A stretch of DNA of 64,000 bases from the IMG/VR virus record IMGVR_UViG_3300010389_000001, positions 168,534 to 232,533 of that record; one strand, 5' to 3'. Position numbers and translations under genes: made by a program. Shown here piece after piece: positions 10,266 through 17,943 of the stretch; the first letter of the stretch is position 1, and the number at the start of each line of letters is the position of its first letter. The notes beneath the pieces are model-generated. The model saw nothing but the letters and a program-made list of their open reading frames with translations. It did not search any database and was not told the DNA's origin.

Positions 10266-11072
10266 ATGATAGACGAACAAAATCTGCCGGGAACAGCGCT
10301 CAACGGCGATCACATTGTTTATTCAAGCTTTTTTGCTGATAATTTCGTAGTACAGCAGAGCGCAATAGTTCATCCAAAGGCGCTACTCATCGACGGTCTG
10401 AGAAAGATATTCCAAAATGACTCTGTCTTTACCTATCGCGATGACGAATTCGGGTATCCGCTAACGCCCGATCTAACTGGCCTGGATGTCGACTCAGAGC
10501 TAACAACAAAGATCCTCATATCTGATACGTTCAGGTATGAGGTAAAGTTTTTTCCTGCGATCCTGGTAAAGTCAAATGGCGGATCTTATAAGCCGCTCTC
10601 TTTCAATCAAAATATGACTTATAAGTATAGGACCGATGTGATAGAGAATGAGTATGGTGCCAGAAAAGTTTTCAGCACTCCAACTCATAGGGTCTATGCG
10701 GGAAGATGGGAGATGAGATTTGATGTTCAGATCTACTCCGAAAGTCAGGCCGAGCTTCAAGAGTTGACAGACATAGTTTCTCTCGCCTTGCAGTACTCTC
10801 TTTGGAATGAGCTTAGAGCAAATGGCCTTTTCATAAGCAGTCTATCAATCGGCGGCGAATCTGCCGAGCCATATGCTAATGATTATGTTTATAACAACAC
10901 AATATCATTGACGACATTATCCGAATGGAGAGTCGAAATTCCAATAGAAAATATTGTTGAAAAAATAGCATTTACACTAGAGCCAACCTGGACTCCAATA
11001 CCGGGCGTAAAAACGAATGGCGACTCATTATCGAGAAGGTTTAGTGAAATAGTTGATTTGACCGAAATTTAA
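10266..11072 (+). CDS. putative tail completion/terminator protein
   Basis: Lies immediately upstream of the sheath gene; pattern FPAILVKS...MRFDVQIYSESQAELQELTDIVSLAL resembles tail-terminator (gpU/gp15-like) proteins. Confidence 0.55.
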   Translation: MIDEQNLPGTALNGDHIVYSSFFADNFVVQQSAIVHPKALLIDGLRKIFQNDSVFTYRDDEFGYPLTPDLTGLDVDSELTTKILISDTFRYEVKFFPAILVKSNGGSYKPLSFNQNMTYKYRTDVIENEYGARKVFSTPTHRVYAGRWEMRFDVQIYSESQAELQELTDIVSLALQYSLWNELRANGLFISSLSIGGESAEPYANDYVYNNTISLTTLSEWRVEIPIENIVEKIAFTLEPTWTPIPGVKTNGDSLSRRFSEIVDLTEI

Positions 11073-11079
11073 AATGAAA

Positions 11080-11112
11080 CTACTAATAATAAACAATTTG
11101 ATGACATATAAT
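11080..11112 (+). promoter_or_regulatory. candidate promoter upstream of the sheath gene
   Basis: CTACTAATAATAAA (11080-11093) recurs with 13/14 identity at 51607-51620; TATAAT at 11107-11112; SD GGAGG before ATG 11131. Confidence 0.4.
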
Positions 11113-11130
11113 ATATGCGGAGGATTTTAA

Positions 11131-14100
11131 ATGGCTAACATACCTGGAGTATCAGGATTTATACAGCCCGGAGCTTTTGCCAGAGATAGAGTTATCTCCA
11201 GGGGCGTGTCTATTCCTGGTGGAATTAGAATAGTTTGTATTATGGGTGAAGGCCTTAGAGAAGAGACCATCATTGAGTCAGCCGCTGGCTTGGGTCAGGA
11301 TGGAAGCGCTGATTGCAGCCCTACCGGCTCCGCTGATGGAAGGTTCTTTAGACTCCAGAATTGGCCGGTTGTAAGCGGCAGAACAGAGCTTAGGCTAAAT
11401 GGAACTCTTCTTTTTGGAAAAGAGGAGGAGATCGATGCCTCTGGTTTAGCTTCTCCGTTTGACTTTAGACTTGATCCAGAGACTGGCTGCATAGAGCTTA
11501 GAGGAGCTTCTATAGGCGACCAGGATGGAAAGGGCTTCTCTGCTTCCTCTTCAAATATCGGAACAGGAATTATCGTTGAGAATGATGACTGTGATCCGCT
11601 TGTTACACTCGATATCTTGGATGACTCCGCGCCAAGTGAGAGATGGACAATCAAGTGCGTATCTGTAGTCAGAGATTCTAACGGCGACCCCATTCCTGGC
11701 CTGTCAACTTTCACGGCAACGGGCTCTGTCTCCGGCCAGATCTACGACGACTCAGGCGCTCCAATAACATTCACGAGCGGTTACTTCACTAGTAACGCTG
11801 GTGCGGTATCTGGAAATGTATCAGAGTGCGATGACGGCTTTACGGTCGCCTATGGTGACATCTCAGGCTCAGCCTTCCCACAGGGCCTCGTCAAGATTAG
11901 AGAGGGCGATACCTCTCTTGATACATCAAATACATTTATTGTCCCTGGAGCAGATCTTGTTTCACAGGGTCAGGCTCTTCCTGGCGATTTCCTTTGTCTC
12001 GATGGCTATGCGGGTCATGAGATCGAGTCAATTGACTATGACGGCAGCGACACCACTATCACGGTTATAAGCGACAGCCTTGGTCCTGCAGATCCTGCAT
12101 GGGGTGAGGAGCCTGACGACGCTCTCGATTGGACGATTAAGGCTACAAACATCTTAATCGATGACGACTCAGTAGCTCATGATGAGATTACTGGCGAGCC
12201 TGCATCAGAGGGAAGCTTCTCTTCCGGCGATATCGGCAAGACGGTTCTAATTTGCCCCGGCGGAGCTTTCGGCGGTGGCAGATTTGTTATAACGGATGTA
12301 ACTTCAACAAGAAGAGTTCGCTTAGTATCACTAGAGGATGATAGCGTATCATTTGAAGACCTAGAGGGTCTGGGCGCTACCGGCCTTGGTGCTACTGGCC
12401 TTACATTCCATCTGCTTCAGAACAACGGCCTGCTTCTTCTTGGAATTCAAGAGGGCGGAACAGCCTTTGAGGTTGGCGATAAGTTCTTTGTTGATGTAAG
12501 CTCAAGAGCATTAGCTCAGGGCGACAATCTGGTTGCCAAGTATATCTACGAGTTGGACCTAAATGATCCTCAGTTCTTTACTGAGGCAAACGATCTATTC
12601 CTAAAGCACGGACTTGTATCAGAGGAGAACACACTATCCCTGGGTGCTCAGCTGGCGCTTGAGAACGGAGCGCCTGGCGTGCTAGCAGTACAGTGTAAGC
12701 CGGCCGTTCCAAGAAGAACGTCCGTAACCCTCCTAGAAGAAAGAGATTCTCTCGGAAATGGTGGATTCTCTGCATGTTATGATGCCGGCACTGAGTCAGC
12801 AGATGCATGTGAGGTCGATGATCTCAGATTCGTTATCCCGAGACCAACGGAGGGCCTTAGAAACGGCCGTCCCGATCCGGATTCCAGAGTCAACATTTTT
12901 GTTGTAAGAGATGGAGCAGAAACTCAGGTATTCCCTAACAAGGTTGCTTTCTATAACTCCCAGCTTGAGACAGATATCCAGCAGGGTCAGTGGATTGCAA
13001 GCTCTGACAATGCATTCTCTTACACAATTGTAAATTCAGAGACAGATATTCTTGCGAGCGGCGATAACGGAACACTCGATGTCGAGTCTGGCAGAGAATA
13101 CTTTACAACTCCAGAGATTGATTTCGACGGAGCAAATGTCGGCGACGTAATTGTCATAACGAGCATGGAAGATGCCTCTGGAACAGTATACACTTCAGTC
13201 GAAGAAATATCTGAGCAGCTATTCGGAGTAGCTCTCCTAGTGCCTTCAGTCGAGCTTCTGATTGATTCAGTTCAGGATGACTCATTGGTTTACGTTTCAG
13301 CAGAGAATGGCGAAACGCTAAATCTATTAAGCTCTTACTCAGACATCCAGTTCTTTGTAAAGGACCCTGCAAATACCAACGCAGACGATGCCTCACTCCT
13401 TCTGCACCGCGACCTAGTATCCAGCGGAGTAATCAGAGAGGGTGATGGAATCAGAATCTCCTATGTAGATGAGAACGATGCAGACTTCTTCGATACAAAT
13501 TGGTTTGAGGCACTTGAAGCACTTGAGGCTTCAGAGGCACAGATTGTTGTACCGCTTCCGAACCAGGCTATTTCATCAATCTTTAGAGCTACTGTAAACC
13601 ACTGTGAAAACATGAGTTCTATTGTAAATAGAAAGGAAAGAGTTGCATTTATTGGAGCCCAGAGAGGAGTTACTCCGGCCGCATTGATTGGAACTGAAGA
13701 AGTTGCTGTTGAAGATATCGGTATAATTGAGGGAATTCAGGGAGATGATCCGGAAGAGGTTCTCGCAGGAAATACCGAAGACCTAGTCAACTTTAAGTTA
13801 AGCGATAATTACACCAGCAACAGATGCGTCTATCTCTACCCAGATGAGATCGTAAGAAATGTAAATGGAACAAATGTTTCTCTGCATGGATTCTACGCAG
13901 CTGCAGCTGCCGCAGGATATCTTTCTGCAAGACAGAATGTTGCAATACCTCTGACGAACAAGGTTCTTTCTGGATTCTCACTAACCAGAGATAAGATCTT
14001 TAGACCGATTATACAGAATCAGCTTGGCGCCGTTGGAGCTACCCTGCTTCAGCCTGTAGCGGGCGGCGGAAGAGTTCTCGCAGGAAGAACTACCAGCCAG

Positions 14101-14406
14101 TCAGGGTTCGTAGAGGACGAGGAGATCTCAATTATATTCATCAGGGATTTCGTAAAGAGAGCGTTGAGAAACTCTCTTGCAGGCTTTATCGGCGGAGTCC
14201 AGAACCCCGACGTAAATCTTCTTATATCACAGAGAACAAGATCAATTATGTCAGGGCTGGTAAGCCAGGGCCTCGTAACCGTCTTTGACAACATTAAGGT
14301 TGAGCAAGATAAGGTTGACCCAAGGCAGATAAATGTGTTCCTCCGATTTACACCGGCGTACCCCATTAACTACGTATTCATCGACATTGAGGTCGGCATA
14401 ATCTAA
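11131..14406 (+). CDS. contractile tail sheath protein (enlarged, 1091 aa)
   Basis: N-terminus PGVSGFIQPGAFARD and C-terminal sheath signature (EEISIIFIRDFVKRALR...VEQDKVDPRQINVFLRFTPAYPINYVFIDIEV); strong SD; upstream of a tube gene. Confidence 0.9.
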   Translation: MANIPGVSGFIQPGAFARDRVISRGVSIPGGIRIVCIMGEGLREETIIESAAGLGQDGSADCSPTGSADGRFFRLQNWPVVSGRTELRLNGTLLFGKEEEIDASGLASPFDFRLDPETGCIELRGASIGDQDGKGFSASSSNIGTGIIVENDDCDPLVTLDILDDSAPSERWTIKCVSVVRDSNGDPIPGLSTFTATGSVSGQIYDDSGAPITFTSGYFTSNAGAVSGNVSECDDGFTVAYGDISGSAFPQGLVKIREGDTSLDTSNTFIVPGADLVSQGQALPGDFLCLDGYAGHEIESIDYDGSDTTITVISDSLGPADPAWGEEPDDALDWTIKATNILIDDDSVAHDEITGEPASEGSFSSGDIGKTVLICPGGAFGGGRFVITDVTSTRRVRLVSLEDDSVSFEDLEGLGATGLGATGLTFHLLQNNGLLLLGIQEGGTAFEVGDKFFVDVSSRALAQGDNLVAKYIYELDLNDPQFFTEANDLFLKHGLVSEENTLSLGAQLALENGAPGVLAVQCKPAVPRRTSVTLLEERDSLGNGGFSACYDAGTESADACEVDDLRFVIPRPTEGLRNGRPDPDSRVNIFVVRDGAETQVFPNKVAFYNSQLETDIQQGQWIASSDNAFSYTIVNSETDILASGDNGTLDVESGREYFTTPEIDFDGANVGDVIVITSMEDASGTVYTSVEEISEQLFGVALLVPSVELLIDSVQDDSLVYVSAENGETLNLLSSYSDIQFFVKDPANTNADDASLLLHRDLVSSGVIREGDGIRISYVDENDADFFDTNWFEALEALEASEAQIVVPLPNQAISSIFRATVNHCENMSSIVNRKERVAFIGAQRGVTPAALIGTEEVAVEDIGIIEGIQGDDPEEVLAGNTEDLVNFKLSDNYTSNRCVYLYPDEIVRNVNGTNVSLHGFYAAAAAAGYLSARQNVAIPLTNKVLSGFSLTRDKIFRPIIQNQLGAVGATLLQPVAGGGRVLAGRTTSQSGFVEDEEISIIFIRDFVKRALRNSLAGFIGGVQNPDVNLLISQRTRSIMSGLVSQGLVTVFDNIKVEQDKVDPRQINVFLRFTPAYPINYVFIDIEVGII

Positions 14407-14429
14407 AAAAACATTCCATATTTTTGGAT

Positions 14430-14467
14430 CCCCCCGGTACAATAGTGCCAGGGGGTTTTTTTGTTTT
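14430..14467 (+). terminator. intrinsic terminator after the sheath gene, overlapping the start signals of the next gene
   Basis: CCCCCCGGTAC-AATA-GTGCCAGGGGG stem-loop followed by TTTTTTTGTTTT. Confidence 0.75.
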
Positions 14468-16206
14468 ACGCAAAATGTTACGAATGCAATTCCAAGATGG
14501 AATATGCAAGAAAAAACGCTGCAGCTAGAGCTGAAAAAAACAAGATAGTATGCAAGACCTGTAAGAAAAGAAAAAAGGAAGCAAGAGAGAGGGCTTGCCC
14601 ATCTTGTAGTTGCCCTATAATATACAAGACATATGCCGGCTTTAAAAAGGGCGAGGAAAGTGATGCGCTATGCCCTTCTTGTGCAAAGCTTACACAATAT
14701 GAAGCTAGGCATTCAATTAAATGCTCAGAGTGTTCGGGGACACACTTTGTAAAGAGAGAAGAAACTTTAAAGAAAATGAGCAAAATGAGTCAGCCTTTTA
14801 TCTGCGGAAGCTGCAAGAAAAAGGCCAGACTAAGCATTGTTTACTCTAGAGATTGCGTAACTTGCGGTAAAAGCATAACTTATAAGAACAAATATAATTA
14901 TAATGCATCAATTAAAAGAAGCAAAAAAGCAAGGTGCGCTTCCTGCGCTCGCACGAATGGCTTCGTACTTCCCATGGAAAGGCCATGTCCAAAATGTAAT
15001 AAGATTATTCATTATAAAACAAAAGATAGCTGCGCGAGAGCCAATAAGCATGACTCGTTCTGCAAGTCCTGCGCACTGTCCGGAAGAATGCCTTCCGATC
15101 GAGCAATTGAGGCTGCGAGAAAAGCAAGGATCGGCAGAGTTGCCTCTCCTGAGGAGCTTAAAAGAAAGGAGGCAACTCTTCTTGAGAAATATGGGGCAAA
15201 AAGCTACCTTGGAACTGACGCTCACAGAAGGATGATGGTTGATTCTGGAGCGTGGAAAGACTATGACGGAAAAACAATAAAGCAAATAGCTAATGAAAAT
15301 GGTCTTCCAGAAAGCGTTCATTCTTCTCTATACAAATGGGTTGCAAGCTCTGATGAAATAAGCTATGATGATATAGCAGAATATTGCAGCAGTTATGAGA
15401 AGAAAATAAGCAACCTAGAAAATCTGGCGTCATTAGCCCTTGGCATCGATCATTTTAATAAAAAAATAAGTGAAGAATTGCCCTATAGGCCAGACTTTAA
15501 GATAAGTGATAAAATATTTTTAAATGTCGATGGCCTTTACTGGCATTCGGAACTTCACTCCGATAGGAAATATCATTTTGATATGAGGAAGAGTTATGAG
15601 GAAGCTGGCCTTAGGATAATTCAGTTCAGAGAAGACGAAGTTAATAAAAAAATGCATATTATCAAATCTATGATAGATAATGCTAGCGGACTTATTAAGA
15701 GTAAGATAGGCGCCAGAAAGTGTAAGATCGCCAAGCCTACGACCGATGAGGCAGAGTCTTTTCTGAGAGAGAACCACATCAAGGGCTACATTACATCGAG
15801 GCATTTGGGCTTATATTATAATGATCAGCTTGTTTCGCTAATGTCGTATAAGCTAAGAAAATCATATGTAAAAATAGACAGATTCTGCTCTAAGGCCGGC
15901 TGGTCTGTGCAGGGAGGGTTCTCTAGATTATTCAAAGAGGTTGAGAGGCAAAATGATCAAGATCTGCCGATTCATTATTGGGTTGATCTCAGATATGGCA
16001 CTGGAGACTTTCTTTTAAGCCAAGGCTTTAAACTTGAAAAAGAAACCCTTGGATGGGAATGGACCGACTTTAAAAAGACTCATAATAGGCTTAAGTGCAG
16101 GGCAAATATGGATGATAGATGCCTCTCTCAGTCGGAGCATGCAAAAGAGCTGGGATTATTTAAAATATATGATGCAGGCCAAAGACTTTACATCAAAAAT
16201 AAATAA
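14461..16206 (+). CDS. free-standing homing-endonuclease-like protein (Zn-ribbon repeats, DUF559/VSR-like nuclease, Hef-like/GNAT-like C-terminal domain)
   Basis: Ten CxxC motifs in the first ~205 aa; NUMOD3-like SGRMPSDRAIEAARKARIG; nuclease core YRPDF...LNVDGLYWHS...GLRIIQFREDE; C-terminal IGARKCKI...FLRENHIKG...RFCS...GGFSRL...IYDAGQ. Basic composition, unlike the acidic flanking tail genes. TTG start inferred; the alternative is ATG 14497. Confidence 0.7.
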   Translation: MFYAKCYECNSKMEYARKNAAARAEKNKIVCKTCKKRKKEARERACPSCSCPIIYKTYAGFKKGEESDALCPSCAKLTQYEARHSIKCSECSGTHFVKREETLKKMSKMSQPFICGSCKKKARLSIVYSRDCVTCGKSITYKNKYNYNASIKRSKKARCASCARTNGFVLPMERPCPKCNKIIHYKTKDSCARANKHDSFCKSCALSGRMPSDRAIEAARKARIGRVASPEELKRKEATLLEKYGAKSYLGTDAHRRMMVDSGAWKDYDGKTIKQIANENGLPESVHSSLYKWVASSDEISYDDIAEYCSSYEKKISNLENLASLALGIDHFNKKISEELPYRPDFKISDKIFLNVDGLYWHSELHSDRKYHFDMRKSYEEAGLRIIQFREDEVNKKMHIIKSMIDNASGLIKSKIGARKCKIAKPTTDEAESFLRENHIKGYITSRHLGLYYNDQLVSLMSYKLRKSYVKIDRFCSKAGWSVQGGFSRLFKEVERQNDQDLPIHYWVDLRYGTGDFLLSQGFKLEKETLGWEWTDFKKTHNRLKCRANMDDRCLSQSEHAKELGLFKIYDAGQRLYIKNK

Positions 16207-16307
16207 TTTATATGAATATATTTTTGATGTAACAAATATCATTTTCTATTTATAATTATTTTATAGTAGATAAGCCTAGTTTCATCAACCTTAATTAGGA
16301 GAATATA

Positions 16308-16937
16308 ATGGCCGAATATCCAAATACAGGCACCATTTTTGATAATCCAGATAATGGCAGTAAAACAAGAACTGGCCTATCTACTCAGATTGTCGTCTAT
16401 GTAGAGGGCGAGCCGGTTGGTGCGATACAGTCCTTTAACGAAAGTCAGAACCGAAGCGTAAAGCCTATTTCTGAGGTCGGAACGGATGGCGTTATTGAGC
16501 TGGTGCCTAACCAGCCTGCAAAGATATCGCTTACCATCAACCGAATCGTGTTCGATGGCCTTTCTCTTCCGGAGGCTTTCTCAAGAGGATATCGCAACAT
16601 CCACGCTCAGAGAATACCTTTTGACATCGTTGTAATAGATAAATTTACTGGAGACGGAGATAACGCCGTAGTTACAACTTACCATAACTGCTTCTTTACG
16701 CAGCTTGGAAAGAACTACACTGTAAATGATTATACGATTCAAGAGAACGCAAGCGTTACAGCAGAGTTTATGTCATCCACGAGAGCTGGGGGCCCCGTTG
16801 CCGATAGCCAGGGCGTATCTGGCGCCAGAGAGATTCCTGGAAGACAGACAGATTCAGTGGAGCAGTCTGCAGATACCGGCGTAAGACGCGGCCCGCTTGA
16901 CTTCTCAGGGCTAATCTCCGCTGCATACGGCAGCTAA
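16308..16937 (+). CDS. tail tube protein
   Basis: Follows the sheath; SD AGGAG; motif IVVYVEGEPVGAIQSF...EVGTDGVIELVP...PFDIVVIDK...TYHNCFF...YTIQENASVTAE matches contractile-tail tube proteins. Confidence 0.85.
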   Translation: MAEYPNTGTIFDNPDNGSKTRTGLSTQIVVYVEGEPVGAIQSFNESQNRSVKPISEVGTDGVIELVPNQPAKISLTINRIVFDGLSLPEAFSRGYRNIHAQRIPFDIVVIDKFTGDGDNAVVTTYHNCFFTQLGKNYTVNDYTIQENASVTAEFMSSTRAGGPVADSQGVSGAREIPGRQTDSVEQSADTGVRRGPLDFSGLISAAYGS

Positions 16938-16959
16938 TTTTAGCAATAAATATTTACTG

Positions 16960-16993
16960 AAAAGCACCATCTTAGCATGGTGCTTTTTCTTTA
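16960..16993 (+). terminator. intrinsic terminator after the tail tube gene
   Basis: Perfect inverted repeat AAAAGCACCAT-CTTAGC-ATGGTGCTTTT followed by a T-rich tract. Confidence 0.85.
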
Positions 16994-16998
16994 TGCGG

Positions 16999-17004
16999 TA
17001 TAAT
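16999..17004 (+). promoter_or_regulatory. candidate -10 element for the chaperone/tape-measure genes
   Basis: TATAAT just after the terminator and upstream of SD AGGAG and ATG 17024; no convincing -35. Confidence 0.35.
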
Positions 17005-17023
17005 ATCCTAAATAGGAGTAACT

Positions 17024-17509
17024 ATGCCAAAGGTTAGAGCCAGTTTGTCTGATGGTAACCGCATGGAAGAAATGCAGGAGCTTTTATCACCAGAGGCTAA
17101 CGCCGAAGAGGATAGCGGTGATGTGGATCCCGCCAAAATTTCTGACCTAAAGAACCTGATTCTTCTAGGCAAATTAACAGAGACTGTAAGGATTGGTGGG
17201 TTTAGCTTTGAGCTATCAACTTTATCTGCAAATGAGCAAGCAGAAGTAATGAAGACTCTAATGAAGGCAGAAGAAATGGATAGGGTTCTGCATTCAAAGT
17301 CTATTGCAATCTCCTATTGTATAAAGAAAATAAACTCTGTACCCCTCTCTGAGCTTGCCGCTGAGCACCCCGGCGATAGCGAGGATGAAAGAAGAGTTGC
17401 CTTTGTACTGGATATGCAGACCACTTTGGTTGAGAAGATATTTACAGAGTATGAAGCTCTAGTCGCAAGGTCAGGACAAGAAGTAGGTTTTGATTCTGTA
17501 AAAAAATAG
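17024..17509 (+). CDS. tail assembly chaperone (gpG-like)
   Basis: Between tube and tape measure; 161 aa, acidic and helical; ends GTA AAA AAA TAG. Confidence 0.75.
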   Translation: MPKVRASLSDGNRMEEMQELLSPEANAEEDSGDVDPAKISDLKNLILLGKLTETVRIGGFSFELSTLSANEQAEVMKTLMKAEEMDRVLHSKSIAISYCIKKINSVPLSELAAEHPGDSEDERRVAFVLDMQTTLVEKIFTEYEALVARSGQEVGFDSVKK

Positions 17510-17943
17510 CAGCGGAGCCATACCACAGGCTCCGCTGGAAGTTATGCAAAATATGGGGCTGCAAAGTTGATGATCCAATCTTTAATGATATCAACAATGC
17601 CCAGTGGGCTTGGTACGCAAGCATGGTTGCTGCAGATCAGAAGGAAACTTATGATCTTTATCTAGACTTCTCTGAATATTTGGCTTCTTTCTGGAATGCA
17701 GAGGCTGTGCAAAAGATTAAGAGTTCAAGAGTAAGGCCCGAAGATCAAGGGTTCGCATCCGATGAGGAATTCGAAGAACAGGTGCTAACAGGAGCATTTA
17801 AGGAAAATGATATTGTTAAGGCTATAAAAGATAAGTATAAAAATACTAATTTAGCTGATAATAATATGGGCTCCAAGGAAAGAACGAGAAGACTGCCGAA
17901 GGACCTATCTGGGATCAGGGATTTATTCGGAGATAGCGACTAA
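17024..17943 (+). CDS. tail assembly chaperone frameshift product (gpGT-like, ~306 aa); includes the tracked ORF 17623..17943
   Basis: The -1 frame from 17506 reads IAAEPYHRLRWKLCKIWGCKVDDPIFNDINNAQWAWYAS and joins MVAADQKETY... without a stop; ATG 17623 has no SD; the stop overlaps the tape-measure start. Confidence 0.8.
17500..17537 (+). promoter_or_regulatory. programmed -1 ribosomal frameshift signal
   Basis: Slippery heptamer A AAA AAA (17500-17506) in frame before TAG, then a perfect 10-bp stem CAGCGGAGCC (17510-17519) / GGCTCCGCTG (17528-17537) with an 8-nt loop; the -1 frame is open through to 17943. Confidence 0.85.

What the first reader, a model, noticed from the sequence alone, without database searches (positions are those of the whole stretch)
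14430..14467. One hairpin acts as sheath terminator and overlaps the endonuclease's -10 box and ribosome-binding site
Seen: the terminator's 3' arm GGGGG (14451-14455) lies 5 nt before TTG 14461, which opens the frame containing the first CxxC, and TACAAT (14438-14443) spans the stem/loop. Knowledge: T4 homing endonuclease genes such as I-TevI are silenced by hairpins that sequester the RBS on read-through mRNA and are translated from transcripts starting inside the hairpin. Inference: read-through from the highly expressed sheath gene is terminated or translationally blocked, while a start near 14450 frees the SD.
Basis: partly seen in the sequence, partly recalled or inferred. Interest (0 to 1): 0.6.

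Follow-up and report, generated by a model that had tools for sequence, protein, structure and literature searches.

The report
Regulatory hairpin guarding a homing endonuclease
A selfish endonuclease gene inserted between the tail sheath and tail tube genes of a marine jumbo phage starts with a hairpin that should end sheath transcription and hide the endonuclease's ribosome-binding site, a control design already known from phage T4.

Summary
Positions 14430-14455 fold into a 10-bp hairpin (-18 kcal/mol) followed by U7GU4. TACAAT (14438-14443) sits at its apex, AGGGGG (14450-14455) forms its 3' arm, and TTG 14461 is the first start codon of the frame.

Comparison settles the start codon. In eight syntenic homologues the start aligns with TTG 14461, and the first CxxC (C6, C9) is invariant. 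ATG 14497 is an internal, non-invariant Met13.

The gene is a free-standing homing endonuclease on a ~1.9-kb cassette (14407-16295). It is absent from 71 of 93 related loci, where sheath and tube lie 11-31 nt apart.

Twelve of 13 cassette leaders have a hairpin just upstream of the start codon. Eleven of them pair the Shine-Dalgarno sequence, and the stems differ by compensatory changes.

In the window's own class, GGTAnnAT at the apex is invariant in all five hairpin leaders. It matches the family's own -10 consensus (rGTATAAT, 4-14 nt upstream of the SD).

The U-tract is variable, so terminator function is not universal. No RNA data exist and no TSS is shown.

Verdict: a well-supported new example of the T4 I-TevI/mobE-type RBS lock combined with a PeSL-like terminator/promoter. 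The internal promoter is still only an inference.

The parts
11131..14406 (+). Tail sheath gene (1091 aa), stop TAA 14404-14406
   Evidence: PHROG tail sheath families 2839/279; weak Pfam Phage_sheath_1C; syntenic in all relatives
14407..16295 (+). Inserted homing-endonuclease cassette (leader + ORF + trailer, ~1.9 kb) relative to endonuclease-less relatives
   Evidence: Closest relatives L005-L011 (sheath C-terminus 89-93% aa, tube 87-91%) have stop + 12-16 nt + tube ATG. Homology resumes at TAGGAGAATATAATG. 71 of 93 loci have gaps of 31 nt or less
14407..14429 (+). A/T-rich leader with ATTCCAT(A)TTTTT, conserved in three cassette lineages (window, L001, L256)
   Evidence: Its distance to the -10-like hexamer varies (17-20 nt) and its match to TTGACA is 2-3 of 6, so it is not a convincing -35
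14430..14455 (+). Hairpin: 5' arm 14430-14440, loop 14441-14444, 3' arm 14445-14455 (10 bp, one C/A mismatch)
   Evidence: covariation
14436..14443 (+). GGTACAAT: -10-like element (TACAAT 14438-14443) at the hairpin apex; predicted TSS about 14449-14451
   Evidence: GGTAnnAT is invariant in the five class-A hairpin leaders. It matches the family consensus rGTATAAT found 4-14 nt upstream of SDs after the tube terminator. Chance of such a hexamer here is 0.03 by shuffling. The TSS itself is inferred
14450..14455 (+). SD-like AGGGGG, entirely within the 3' arm, 5 nt before TTG
   Evidence: 5 of 5 nt paired. The homologous positions carry GGAGG/GGGAG/GAGG/GGGGA in relatives
14456..14467 (+). U-tract T7GT4 of the intrinsic-terminator-like element; contains the start codon
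   Evidence: A 95-99% identical environmental variant has one T fewer
14461..16206 (+). Homing endonuclease ORF, 581 aa from TTG: N-terminal CxxC zinc ribbons plus a C-terminal PD-(D/E)XK-like nuclease region
   Evidence: PHROG 3339 and 559. Weak matches to T7 endonuclease I and I-Bth0305I at residues 340-396. Homologues in the same site
14497..14499 (+). ATG chosen by the gene caller (569-aa product); internal Met13
   Evidence: P0001 is 569 aa. Residue 13 is L or I in L089, L299 and L186. There is no SD upstream, and this start would delete the invariant C6/C9
16245..16256 (+). TCTATTTATAAT in the cassette trailer; sigma-70-like GTAACA-16-TATAAT at 16229-16256; candidate promoter restoring tube transcription
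   Evidence: The motif CTATT(T/A)AT is conserved downstream of both endonuclease classes. Its function is inferred
16296..16937 (+). Tube RBS (TAGGAGAATATA) and tail tube gene 16308-16937
   Evidence: PHROG 985; Pfam Phi812_tail_tube on homologues
16963..17004 (+). Family-conserved tube terminator (16963-16984 + T-run) followed by GGTATAAT (16997-17004), 9 nt before the next SD: reference example of the family's -10

Best explanation
Positions 14430-14467 are the 5' control module of a free-standing homing endonuclease cassette. The cassette is inserted exactly between the sheath stop codon and the tube RBS of an uncultivated marine jumbo phage.

On transcripts coming from the sheath gene, the RNA hairpin plus U-tract terminates a share of them before the endonuclease ORF. 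The start codon lies inside the U-tract. On read-through transcripts the same hairpin pairs all of the SD-like AGGGGG, so the TTG-initiated ORF is poorly translated.

A -10-only promoter (GGTACAAT, the family's rGTATAAT type) sits at the apex. It would start transcripts at about 14450. Those transcripts lack the 5' arm, cannot form the hairpin or terminate, and expose the SD. They would give a low, self-contained level of endonuclease from a weak TTG/GGGGG initiation region.

A conserved promoter-like motif in the cassette trailer would restore tube expression.

Shown: the hairpin, its covariation, SD sequestration in silico, the TTG start, and the mobile-cassette status. Inferred: termination efficiency, the internal TSS, and the trailer promoter.
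For: Structure and statistics.

Start codon: homologues' ATG aligns with TTG 14461. M1, C6, C9, Y15, C31 and C34 are invariant. Differences in codons 2-12 are mostly synonymous.

Cassette: absent from the closest relatives, and present in the same site in at least 12 lineages with two different nuclease domains.

Conserved RBS lock: 12 of 13 leaders have a hairpin (-10 to -24 kcal/mol) upstream of the start, and in 11 of them the SD is 4-5 of 5 nt paired. Compensatory changes are seen.

-10 element: GGTAnnAT is invariant in five class-A leaders whose stems differ. In L256 it is unpaired, so the constraint is on sequence, not structure. The per-leader chance of such a hexamer is 0.03-0.28.

The family -10 consensus and its spacing were derived independently. 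38 of 53 tube-downstream regions carry one (23.8 expected), with G at -1 in 28 of 38.

Either/or pattern: the one class-A leader without a -10-like hexamer (L003) has its SD outside the hairpin. L301 has no hairpin and no SD, but has AGTATAAT 9 nt before the ATG.

A transcript starting at 14450 has no significant structure (z -0.18).

The same logic is documented experimentally in T4 and Aeh1 (PMC2988022, PMC3014915). Terminator/promoter composites that overlap the -10 are documented as PeSLs (PMC2839356).
Against: There is no transcript data at all. Only DNA contigs were found, and the two metatranscriptomes of the same study hold next to nothing of the stretch.

There is no credible -35, and the sigma-70 scan does not report a promoter here.

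GGTAYAAT also occurs inside genes (9 in the window, 3.6 expected), so the motif alone is not specific.

In class-B leaders (AT-rich loops) a -10-like hexamer is expected by chance in 40-60% of cases and is missing in 3 of 7.

The U-tract has 3 or fewer U in most relatives and none in L256, so termination is not the conserved role.

Across 40 other members of the endonuclease family in other genomic sites, SD sequestration is not significantly commoner than in neighbouring genes (12/40 vs 35/155, n.s.). A -10 next to the SD is only weakly enriched (9/40 vs 16/155, p 0.04).

An mRNA starting at the first base of its SD is an unusual substrate.
Confidence: 0.5

Rival explanations
1. The hairpin is a terminator/attenuator and a translational throttle only, with no internal promoter. 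The endonuclease is made at a trickle from read-through late sheath transcripts when the hairpin breathes or is cleaved. The apex GGTACAAT is inherited sequence without promoter function.
For: The hairpin and SD pairing are the near-universal features (11 of 13 leaders pair the SD), whereas the -10-like hexamer is not universal. There is no -35. Seven T4 free-standing endonucleases are promoter-less cassettes that ride upstream promoters (PMC2988022). The weak TTG/GGGGG initiation region fits a design for very low expression.
Against: GGTAnnAT is invariant in five class-A leaders while the flanking stem positions have turned over. It is unpaired in L256. It matches the family's own -10 in sequence (G at -1) and in distance to the SD. 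L003, which lacks it, also unlocks its SD. L301 keeps AGTATAAT without any hairpin.
Confidence: 0.3
2. The inverted repeat acts at the DNA level. It could be an operator for autorepression by the endonuclease (as for I-TevI), or a PeSL-like recombination site that mediated cassette insertion and nuclease-domain swapping. Any RNA effects would be secondary.
For: Class-B leaders carry a 17-bp near-perfect inverted repeat. Leader and zinc-ribbon domain are shared by two nuclease classes, which implies recombination inside the cassette. PeSLs mediate such shuffling, and I-TevI binds an operator overlapping its promoter.
Against: G-U pairs are kept where DNA would be mismatched, which points to selection on the RNA. 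The repeat always ends 0-7 nt before the start codon and always contains the SD. I saw no clear similarity between the leader and the empty sheath-tube junction.
Confidence: 0.12
3. It is an ordinary sheath terminator with no link to the endonuclease. Translation starts at ATG 14497, as the gene caller chose.
For: The automatic call gives a 569-aa product. TTG is a rare start codon.
Against: Endonuclease-less relatives have no terminator and only 11-31 nt between sheath and tube, so the hairpin came with the cassette. All homologues start at the aligned codon with ATG and a good SD. C6 and C9 are invariant, Met13 is not, and there is no SD before 14497.
Confidence: 0.03

Closest known systems
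T4 I-TevI / I-TevII / I-TevIII, T4 segB and Aeromonas phage Aeh1 mobE: an RBS-sequestering hairpin with a promoter placed so that its transcripts lack the 5' arm (Gott 1988; Gibb & Edgell 2007, 2009; reviewed in PMC2988022 and PMC3014915)
   Same: A homing endonuclease gene. The SD is paired in a stable hairpin on read-through RNA. A promoter-like -10 lies inside the hairpin-encoding DNA. The design fits low expression.
   Different: This is a non-T4 phage family (no nucleotide match in the phage collection; sheath only 29-31% identical to the best phage hits). The -10 is rGTAYAAT, not TATAAATA. The hairpin is also a canonical terminator with the start codon in its U-tract. Upstream transcription is late (sheath), so the control is insulation rather than early/late timing. 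Nothing has been tested experimentally here.
PeSLs, the composite promoter-early/stem-loop terminator cassettes of T4-type phages (Arbiol 2010, PMC2839356; Comeau 2014, PMC4122927)
   Same: The order of parts matches: stop codon in an A/T-rich stretch, a stem-loop with poly-C/poly-G arms overlapping the -10, then SD and start codon. One element combines terminator and promoter. It is associated with an inserted accessory gene.
   Different: PeSLs have strong -35 and -10 early promoters, whereas here there is no -35. PeSLs are many repeated copies in hyperplastic regions. Here I found only about three such composites in 232 kb, and this one sits in the core tail module. In PeSL descriptions the SD lies downstream of the stem, whereas here it is in the stem.
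T4 genes e, soc and 49: late genes whose SD is masked on early read-through transcripts (PMC3014915)
   Same: A masked SD on long transcripts and free translation from a promoter just upstream of the RBS.
   Different: Those are host-phage genes under temporal control. This is a selfish cassette inside a late operon.
T4 mobE: an intrinsic terminator at the endonuclease 5' end, with a separate promoter between mobE and nrdB that preserves downstream gene expression (PMC2988022)
   Same: A terminator associated with the endonuclease, plus a promoter-like element in the 3' trailer that could rescue the essential downstream gene (here the tube).
   Different: In mobE the terminator lies inside the coding region and about 30% of transcripts stop there. 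Here it precedes and overlaps the start codon. The trailer promoter is only inferred from a conserved motif.

Membership tests
Intrinsic (Rho-independent) terminator | G+C-rich stem with a short loop, directly followed by a U-tract, downstream of a stop codon | tested here: met
   10-bp stem with 8 G-C pairs, a 4-nt loop, U7GU4, 24 nt after the sheath stop
Intrinsic (Rho-independent) terminator | Transcript 3' ends in the U-tract | not testable with these tools
   No RNA reads cover the locus
Intrinsic (Rho-independent) terminator | Conserved as a terminator in homologous positions | tested here: not met
   Only the window (7+4 U), L090 (7), L089 and L303 (5) and L142 (4) have 4 or more U after the stem. 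L256 has none. Endonuclease-less relatives have no hairpin
T4-type RBS-sequestering hairpin with internal promoter (I-TevI/mobE class) | SD and/or start codon base-paired in a stable local hairpin | tested here: met
   AGGGGG is fully paired. The same holds for 11 of 13 leaders, with compensatory changes
T4-type RBS-sequestering hairpin with internal promoter (I-TevI/mobE class) | A promoter positioned so that its transcript lacks the 5' arm | tested here: inconclusive
   The -10-like GGTACAAT at the apex matches the family consensus and spacing. There is no -35, and the TSS is not mappable
T4-type RBS-sequestering hairpin with internal promoter (I-TevI/mobE class) | T4 late promoter consensus TATAAATA | tested here: not met
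   TACAATAG matches 4 of 8. The phage is not T4-like, so this bears on membership only, not on the mechanism
PeSL (promoter-early stem-loop) | A sigma-70-like -35 and -10 with a stem-loop between them or overlapping them, then SD and start codon | tested here: inconclusive
   The -10 (5 of 6), the overlapping stem, the A/T-rich upstream region and the SD plus start are present. The -35 is absent (2-3 of 6)
PeSL (promoter-early stem-loop) | Many similar copies flanking accessory ORFs, mediating recombination | tested here: not met
   Only three terminator hairpins with a -10-like loop were found in 232 kb, and their sequences are unrelated
Free-standing homing endonuclease gene | Sporadic presence at one precise intergenic site between conserved genes | tested here: met
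   Present in 12 of 93 loci, always between the sheath stop and the tube RBS
Free-standing homing endonuclease gene | A recognisable nuclease domain | tested here: met
   PHROG 3339 'homing endonuclease', E 1e-38. Only weak PD-(D/E)XK-type matches in the PDB (E 0.2-0.8) and no Pfam hit above threshold. The sister class has NUMOD3 + HNH
Free-standing homing endonuclease gene | Site-specific cleavage of the empty allele, and homing | not testable with these tools
   Needs the enzyme and target DNA

The most novel reading that the evidence does not exclude
The heritable unit may not be the endonuclease gene itself. It may be a self-insulating 'chassis' made of a leader hairpin (terminator, RBS lock and -10 in about 35 nt), a zinc-ribbon targeting domain, and a trailer promoter. 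This chassis would persist at the sheath-tube junction of a whole marine jumbo-phage family and exchange its nuclease domain (PD-(D/E)XK-like versus NUMOD3-HNH). The hairpin would then let a selfish gene sit inside the most stoichiometry-sensitive late operon without disturbing it.
Probability: 0.3. Interest if true: 0.55.

Novelty: new member of a known kind. Interest (0 to 1): 0.4.

Why it matters
It corrects the gene start from ATG 14497 to TTG 14461, which restores a zinc ribbon.

It identifies a mobile endonuclease cassette splitting the sheath-tube pair.

It shows that the T4-style trick of hiding a homing endonuclease's ribosome-binding site is conserved by compensatory evolution in an unrelated, uncultivated phage family. 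The trick may include a promoter inside the hairpin.

This supports the view that tight, compact, self-contained regulation is a general requirement for selfish nucleases to persist in essential operons.

It also gives a small natural terminator/promoter/RBS-lock element (about 40 nt) that can be tested directly with reporters.

Tried and rejected
- blastn of 11000-17600 against 50,697 phage records found no match. tblastn of the sheath gave only distant hits.
- Pfam on the endonuclease gave nothing above threshold.
- tblastn of the endonuclease against its own genome found no paralogue. HNH, GIY-YIG and NUMOD3 family searches of the genome found no other homing endonuclease, so the design could not be tested on sister genes in the same phage.
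- The DNA pattern for MFYA(K/N)CxxC was searched in two collections. In viral contigs it found only the three loci already known plus chance hits. In metagenome contigs it added two real loci (L186, L256) among roughly 120 chance hits.
- Sequencing runs: only DNA holders were found, with no RNA holder. Laying contigs of four runs gave no 5' or 3' ends. It showed only a 95-99% identical variant with one T fewer in the U-tract.
- A family-wide test on 40 distinct endonuclease leaders in other genomic contexts, against 155 neighbouring genes, was weak. SD pairing was not significant, and a -10 next to the SD reached only p 0.04. Automatic start picking is noisy.
- I considered ATTCCAT(A)TTTTT as a -35 and rejected it. 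Its spacing to the -10 varies (17-20 nt) and its match to the consensus is poor.
- I considered the T4 late consensus TATAAATA and rejected it.
- I considered similarity between the leader and the empty target site (an I-TevI-style operator) and saw nothing convincing.
- No alternative genetic code was needed.

Full report
**Observation.** The sequence is exactly as described.
- Positions 14430-14455 read CCCCC-C-GGTAC-AATA-GTGCC-A-GGGGG.
- As RNA they fold into a 10-bp hairpin with one C/A mismatch and a 4-nt loop. The energy is -18.3 kcal/mol, against -10.8 +/- 2.6 for shuffles (z -2.9).
- The hairpin survives in 101- and 146-nt contexts.
- It is followed by T7GT4 (14456-14467).
- TACAAT is 14438-14443.
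- TTG 14461 is the first possible start after the in-frame stop TAG 14443-14445.
- The simple terminator scan missed the element because of the mismatch. A custom hairpin+T-run scan of the whole 232,533-bp genome recovers it as one of the stronger intergenic candidates.

**Context.** The window is the last 64 kb of a 232.5-kb linear IMG/VR virus record, estimated 68% complete, with 42% G+C. It has no nucleotide relatives among 50,697 deposited phages.
- ORF 11131-14406 is the tail sheath.
- ORF 16308-16937 is the tail tube.
- The ORF between them matches PHROG 3339 'homing endonuclease' (E 1e-38) and PHROG 559.
- That ORF gets no Pfam hit. Residues 340-396 give only weak matches to the PD-(D/E)XK core of T7 endonuclease I and to I-Bth0305I.

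**Start codon.** The database copy of the protein is 569 aa, meaning it was called from ATG 14497. Comparison contradicts that call.
- In every syntenic homologue an ATG with a good SD aligns with TTG 14461. The N-termini read MFYAKC.., MFTIKC.., MSYSKC.., MFYANC...
- In an eight-sequence alignment, M1, C6, C9, Y15, C31 and C34 are invariant.
- C6/C9 together with C31/C34 make the first four-cysteine ribbon. Starting at Met13 would break that ribbon.
- Residue 13 is L or I in three relatives.
- No SD precedes 14497.
- I take TTG 14461 as the start (about 0.9).

**A mobile cassette.**
- Of 93 loci carrying the sheath 3' end, 71 have the tube gene 11-31 nt downstream, with no hairpin.
- These 71 include the window's closest relatives, with sheath C-terminus 89-93% and tube 87-91% identical.
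- Relative to those relatives, window 14407-16295 is an insertion between the sheath TAA and the tube RBS TAGGAGAATATA.
- Class A cassettes carry zinc ribbons plus the PD-(D/E)XK-like C-terminus. They are the window, L001/2, L003/4/12, L089, L090 and probably L256.
- Class B cassettes carry the same zinc-ribbon N-terminus (BLASTP E 2e-12 from residue 1) fused to NUMOD3 + HNH. They are L133, L142, L150, L186, L299 and L301-L303.
- This sporadic, site-specific distribution is the signature of a free-standing homing endonuclease.

**The leader hairpin is conserved by compensation.**
- Twelve of 13 distinct leaders fold into a hairpin of -10 to -24 kcal/mol that ends 0-11 nt before the start codon (0-5 nt in the eleven that pair the SD).
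- In 11 of them the SD-like core (GGAGG, GGGAG, GAGG, GGGGA, GGGGG) is 4-5 of 5 nt paired in the 3' arm.
- The arm sequences differ: CCCCC/GGGGG, AGATCCCTCCA/TGGAGGGATCT, CCTCTTCG/CGAAGAGG, and others.
- In class A, 7 of 15 aligned pairs show double compensatory changes. The covariation score is 0.487, against 0.337 for shuffles (0 of 500) and 0.19-0.26 for slid controls.
- In class B, 4 of 17 pairs show compensatory changes.
- There are two exceptions. L003 has a plain terminator followed by a free GGAGG. L301 has no hairpin and no SD.
- RBS sequestration is therefore the conserved, selected property.

**Terminator.** The window's element has textbook anatomy, but the U-tract varies among relatives:
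- 7 U in L090;
- 5 U in L089 and L303;
- 4 U in L142;
- 3 or fewer in the rest, and none in L256.

A near-identical environmental variant has one T fewer. Endonuclease-less phages end the sheath-tube unit with a conserved terminator after the tube (window 16963-16984). So termination after the sheath is a property of some cassettes, including this one. It is predicted, not shown.

**The -10.** Evidence for:
- In the five class-A hairpin leaders the only invariant block is GGTAnnAT at the apex. The versions are GGTACAAT twice, GGTATCAT, GGTACTAT and GGTATAAT.
- In L256 the block lies in an unpaired loop, so the constraint is on sequence.
- Its 3' end is 5-10 nt from the SD.
- Independently, the family's conserved tube-to-next-gene spacer defines a -10-only promoter class. 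In 38 of 53 distinct relatives a TAnnnT hexamer lies 4-14 nt upstream of the SD, against 23.8 expected.
- That class has G at -1 in 28 of 38 cases, giving the consensus rGTATAATa. It includes GTACAAT variants.
- The genome's repeated early units show a similar short -10-to-SD spacing: TTGCAC-N16-TATAGG-8 nt-GGGAGG.
- Shuffling gives a chance of 0.03 for such a hexamer in the window's hairpin, and 0.10-0.28 in the other class-A leaders.
- L003, which lacks the motif, leaves its SD free. L301 keeps AGTATAAT 9 nt before a start codon that has no SD.
- An RNA starting at 14450 is unstructured (z -0.18).

Evidence against:
- There is no -35, and the consensus scan makes no promoter call here.
- GGTAYAAT also occurs inside genes.
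- In AT-rich class-B loops such hexamers are at chance level.
- There are no RNA data.

I put the internal promoter at roughly 0.5-0.6.

**Trailer.** Downstream of both endonuclease classes lies a conserved TCTATT(T/A)AT... motif. In the window it is 16245-16256, within a sigma-70-like GTAACA-16-TATAAT. It is absent from the short sheath-tube spacers of endonuclease-less relatives, but it does occur in the 156-nt spacer of endonuclease-less L151. It may restore tube transcription, as a promoter between mobE and nrdB does in T4. This is inference.

**Mechanism and rivals.**
- Best model (0.5): one element acts as terminator, RBS lock and internal -10. It insulates a weakly translated (TTG, GGGGG) selfish gene from the strong late sheath transcript.
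- Rival 1 (0.3): the same element without the promoter. Expression would come from leaky read-through.
- Rival 2 (0.12): a DNA-level operator or recombination site.
- Rival 3 (0.03): an unrelated sheath terminator with an ATG 14497 start. The comparison contradicts this.

**Relation to known systems.**
- The RBS lock with an internal promoter is established for T4 I-TevI/II/III, segB, Aeh1 mobE and T4 e/soc/49 (PMC2988022, PMC3014915).
- Composite terminator/promoter stem-loops that overlap the -10 are known as PeSLs (PMC2839356, PMC4122927).
- This element works like both. It is not a member of either family in the strict sense. It lacks the T4 late consensus and a -35, and it is not a repeated family. 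The phage is unrelated to T4.
- I therefore class it as a new member of a known kind.

**Limits and compliance.**
- All functional steps are predictions. The host is unknown.
- Read laying was given 3,601 letters.
- Only table 11 was used.

Noticed in passing
window 14365-14406 and 16296-16343, compared with L005: The last 7 sheath codons differ at every third position between the window and the endonuclease-less relative L005, although third-position identity over the last 290 sheath codons is 0.50. In contrast, the tube RBS and first 12 tube codons are 35/36 identical. This asymmetric flank divergence could reflect co-conversion or target-site immunity.
   Followed up: partly
window 16963-17004: The tube gene is followed by a terminator hairpin and then GGTATAAT, 9 nt before the next SD. 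This arrangement is conserved across the phage family and defines a -35-less promoter consensus, rGTATAATa.
   Followed up: yes
own genome G000:C1 about 6,600-79,200 (outside the window): About 17 copies of a repeated unit occur here: TTGCAC/TTGATC-N16-(C)GGTTATAGG-8 nt-GGGAGG-5 nt-ATG. It is probably the early promoter/RBS cassette of this phage.
   Followed up: partly
own genome G000:C1 125468-125502 and 133449-133486 (outside the window): Two more hairpin+T-run elements carry a -10-like hexamer in the loop directly before a start codon. One is GGCGCGTAAAG-TATAAT-CTTTACGCGCC-TTTTGTT-ATG, before a RuvC-like gene. The other has the loop TAGTAATATAT. Compact terminator/promoter composites therefore recur in this genome.
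   Followed up: partly
L133, L142, L150, L186, L299, L301-L303 (sheath-tube junction): A second endonuclease class occupies the same site. It has the same zinc-ribbon N-terminus and the same kind of leader and trailer, but NUMOD3 + HNH in place of the PD-(D/E)XK-like domain. This is nuclease-domain swapping on a shared targeting module.
   Followed up: partly
L168, L151/L152/L149, L163, L157 (sheath-tube spacers of 121-364 nt): These endonuclease-less relatives have terminator-like hairpins between sheath and tube. L151 also has the cassette trailer motif (CTATTAAT / CTATTTA). These may be scars of endonuclease loss.
   Followed up: no
window 11073-11130; L003 2621-2690; L089 676-727; L090 629-693: A conserved (A)CTACTAATA(T/A)AA motif lies 45-60 nt upstream of the sheath start in four distant relatives. 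TACTAAT is strand-biased upstream of genes (8 versus 1). It is a candidate late-promoter or activator site.
   Followed up: partly
L002 6265-7884; L090 6472-7221: Neighbouring genes in related phages carry an intein with a LAGLIDADG domain, or a free-standing LAGLIDADG gene. The tail module of this family hosts several kinds of selfish elements.
   Followed up: no
window 17510-17537, minus strand: A strong 10-bp hairpin (CAGCGGAGCC...GGCTCCGCTG) has a T-run on the minus strand, at the end of the 161-aa ORF 17024-17509. All neighbouring genes are on the plus strand, so its role is unexplained.
   Followed up: no
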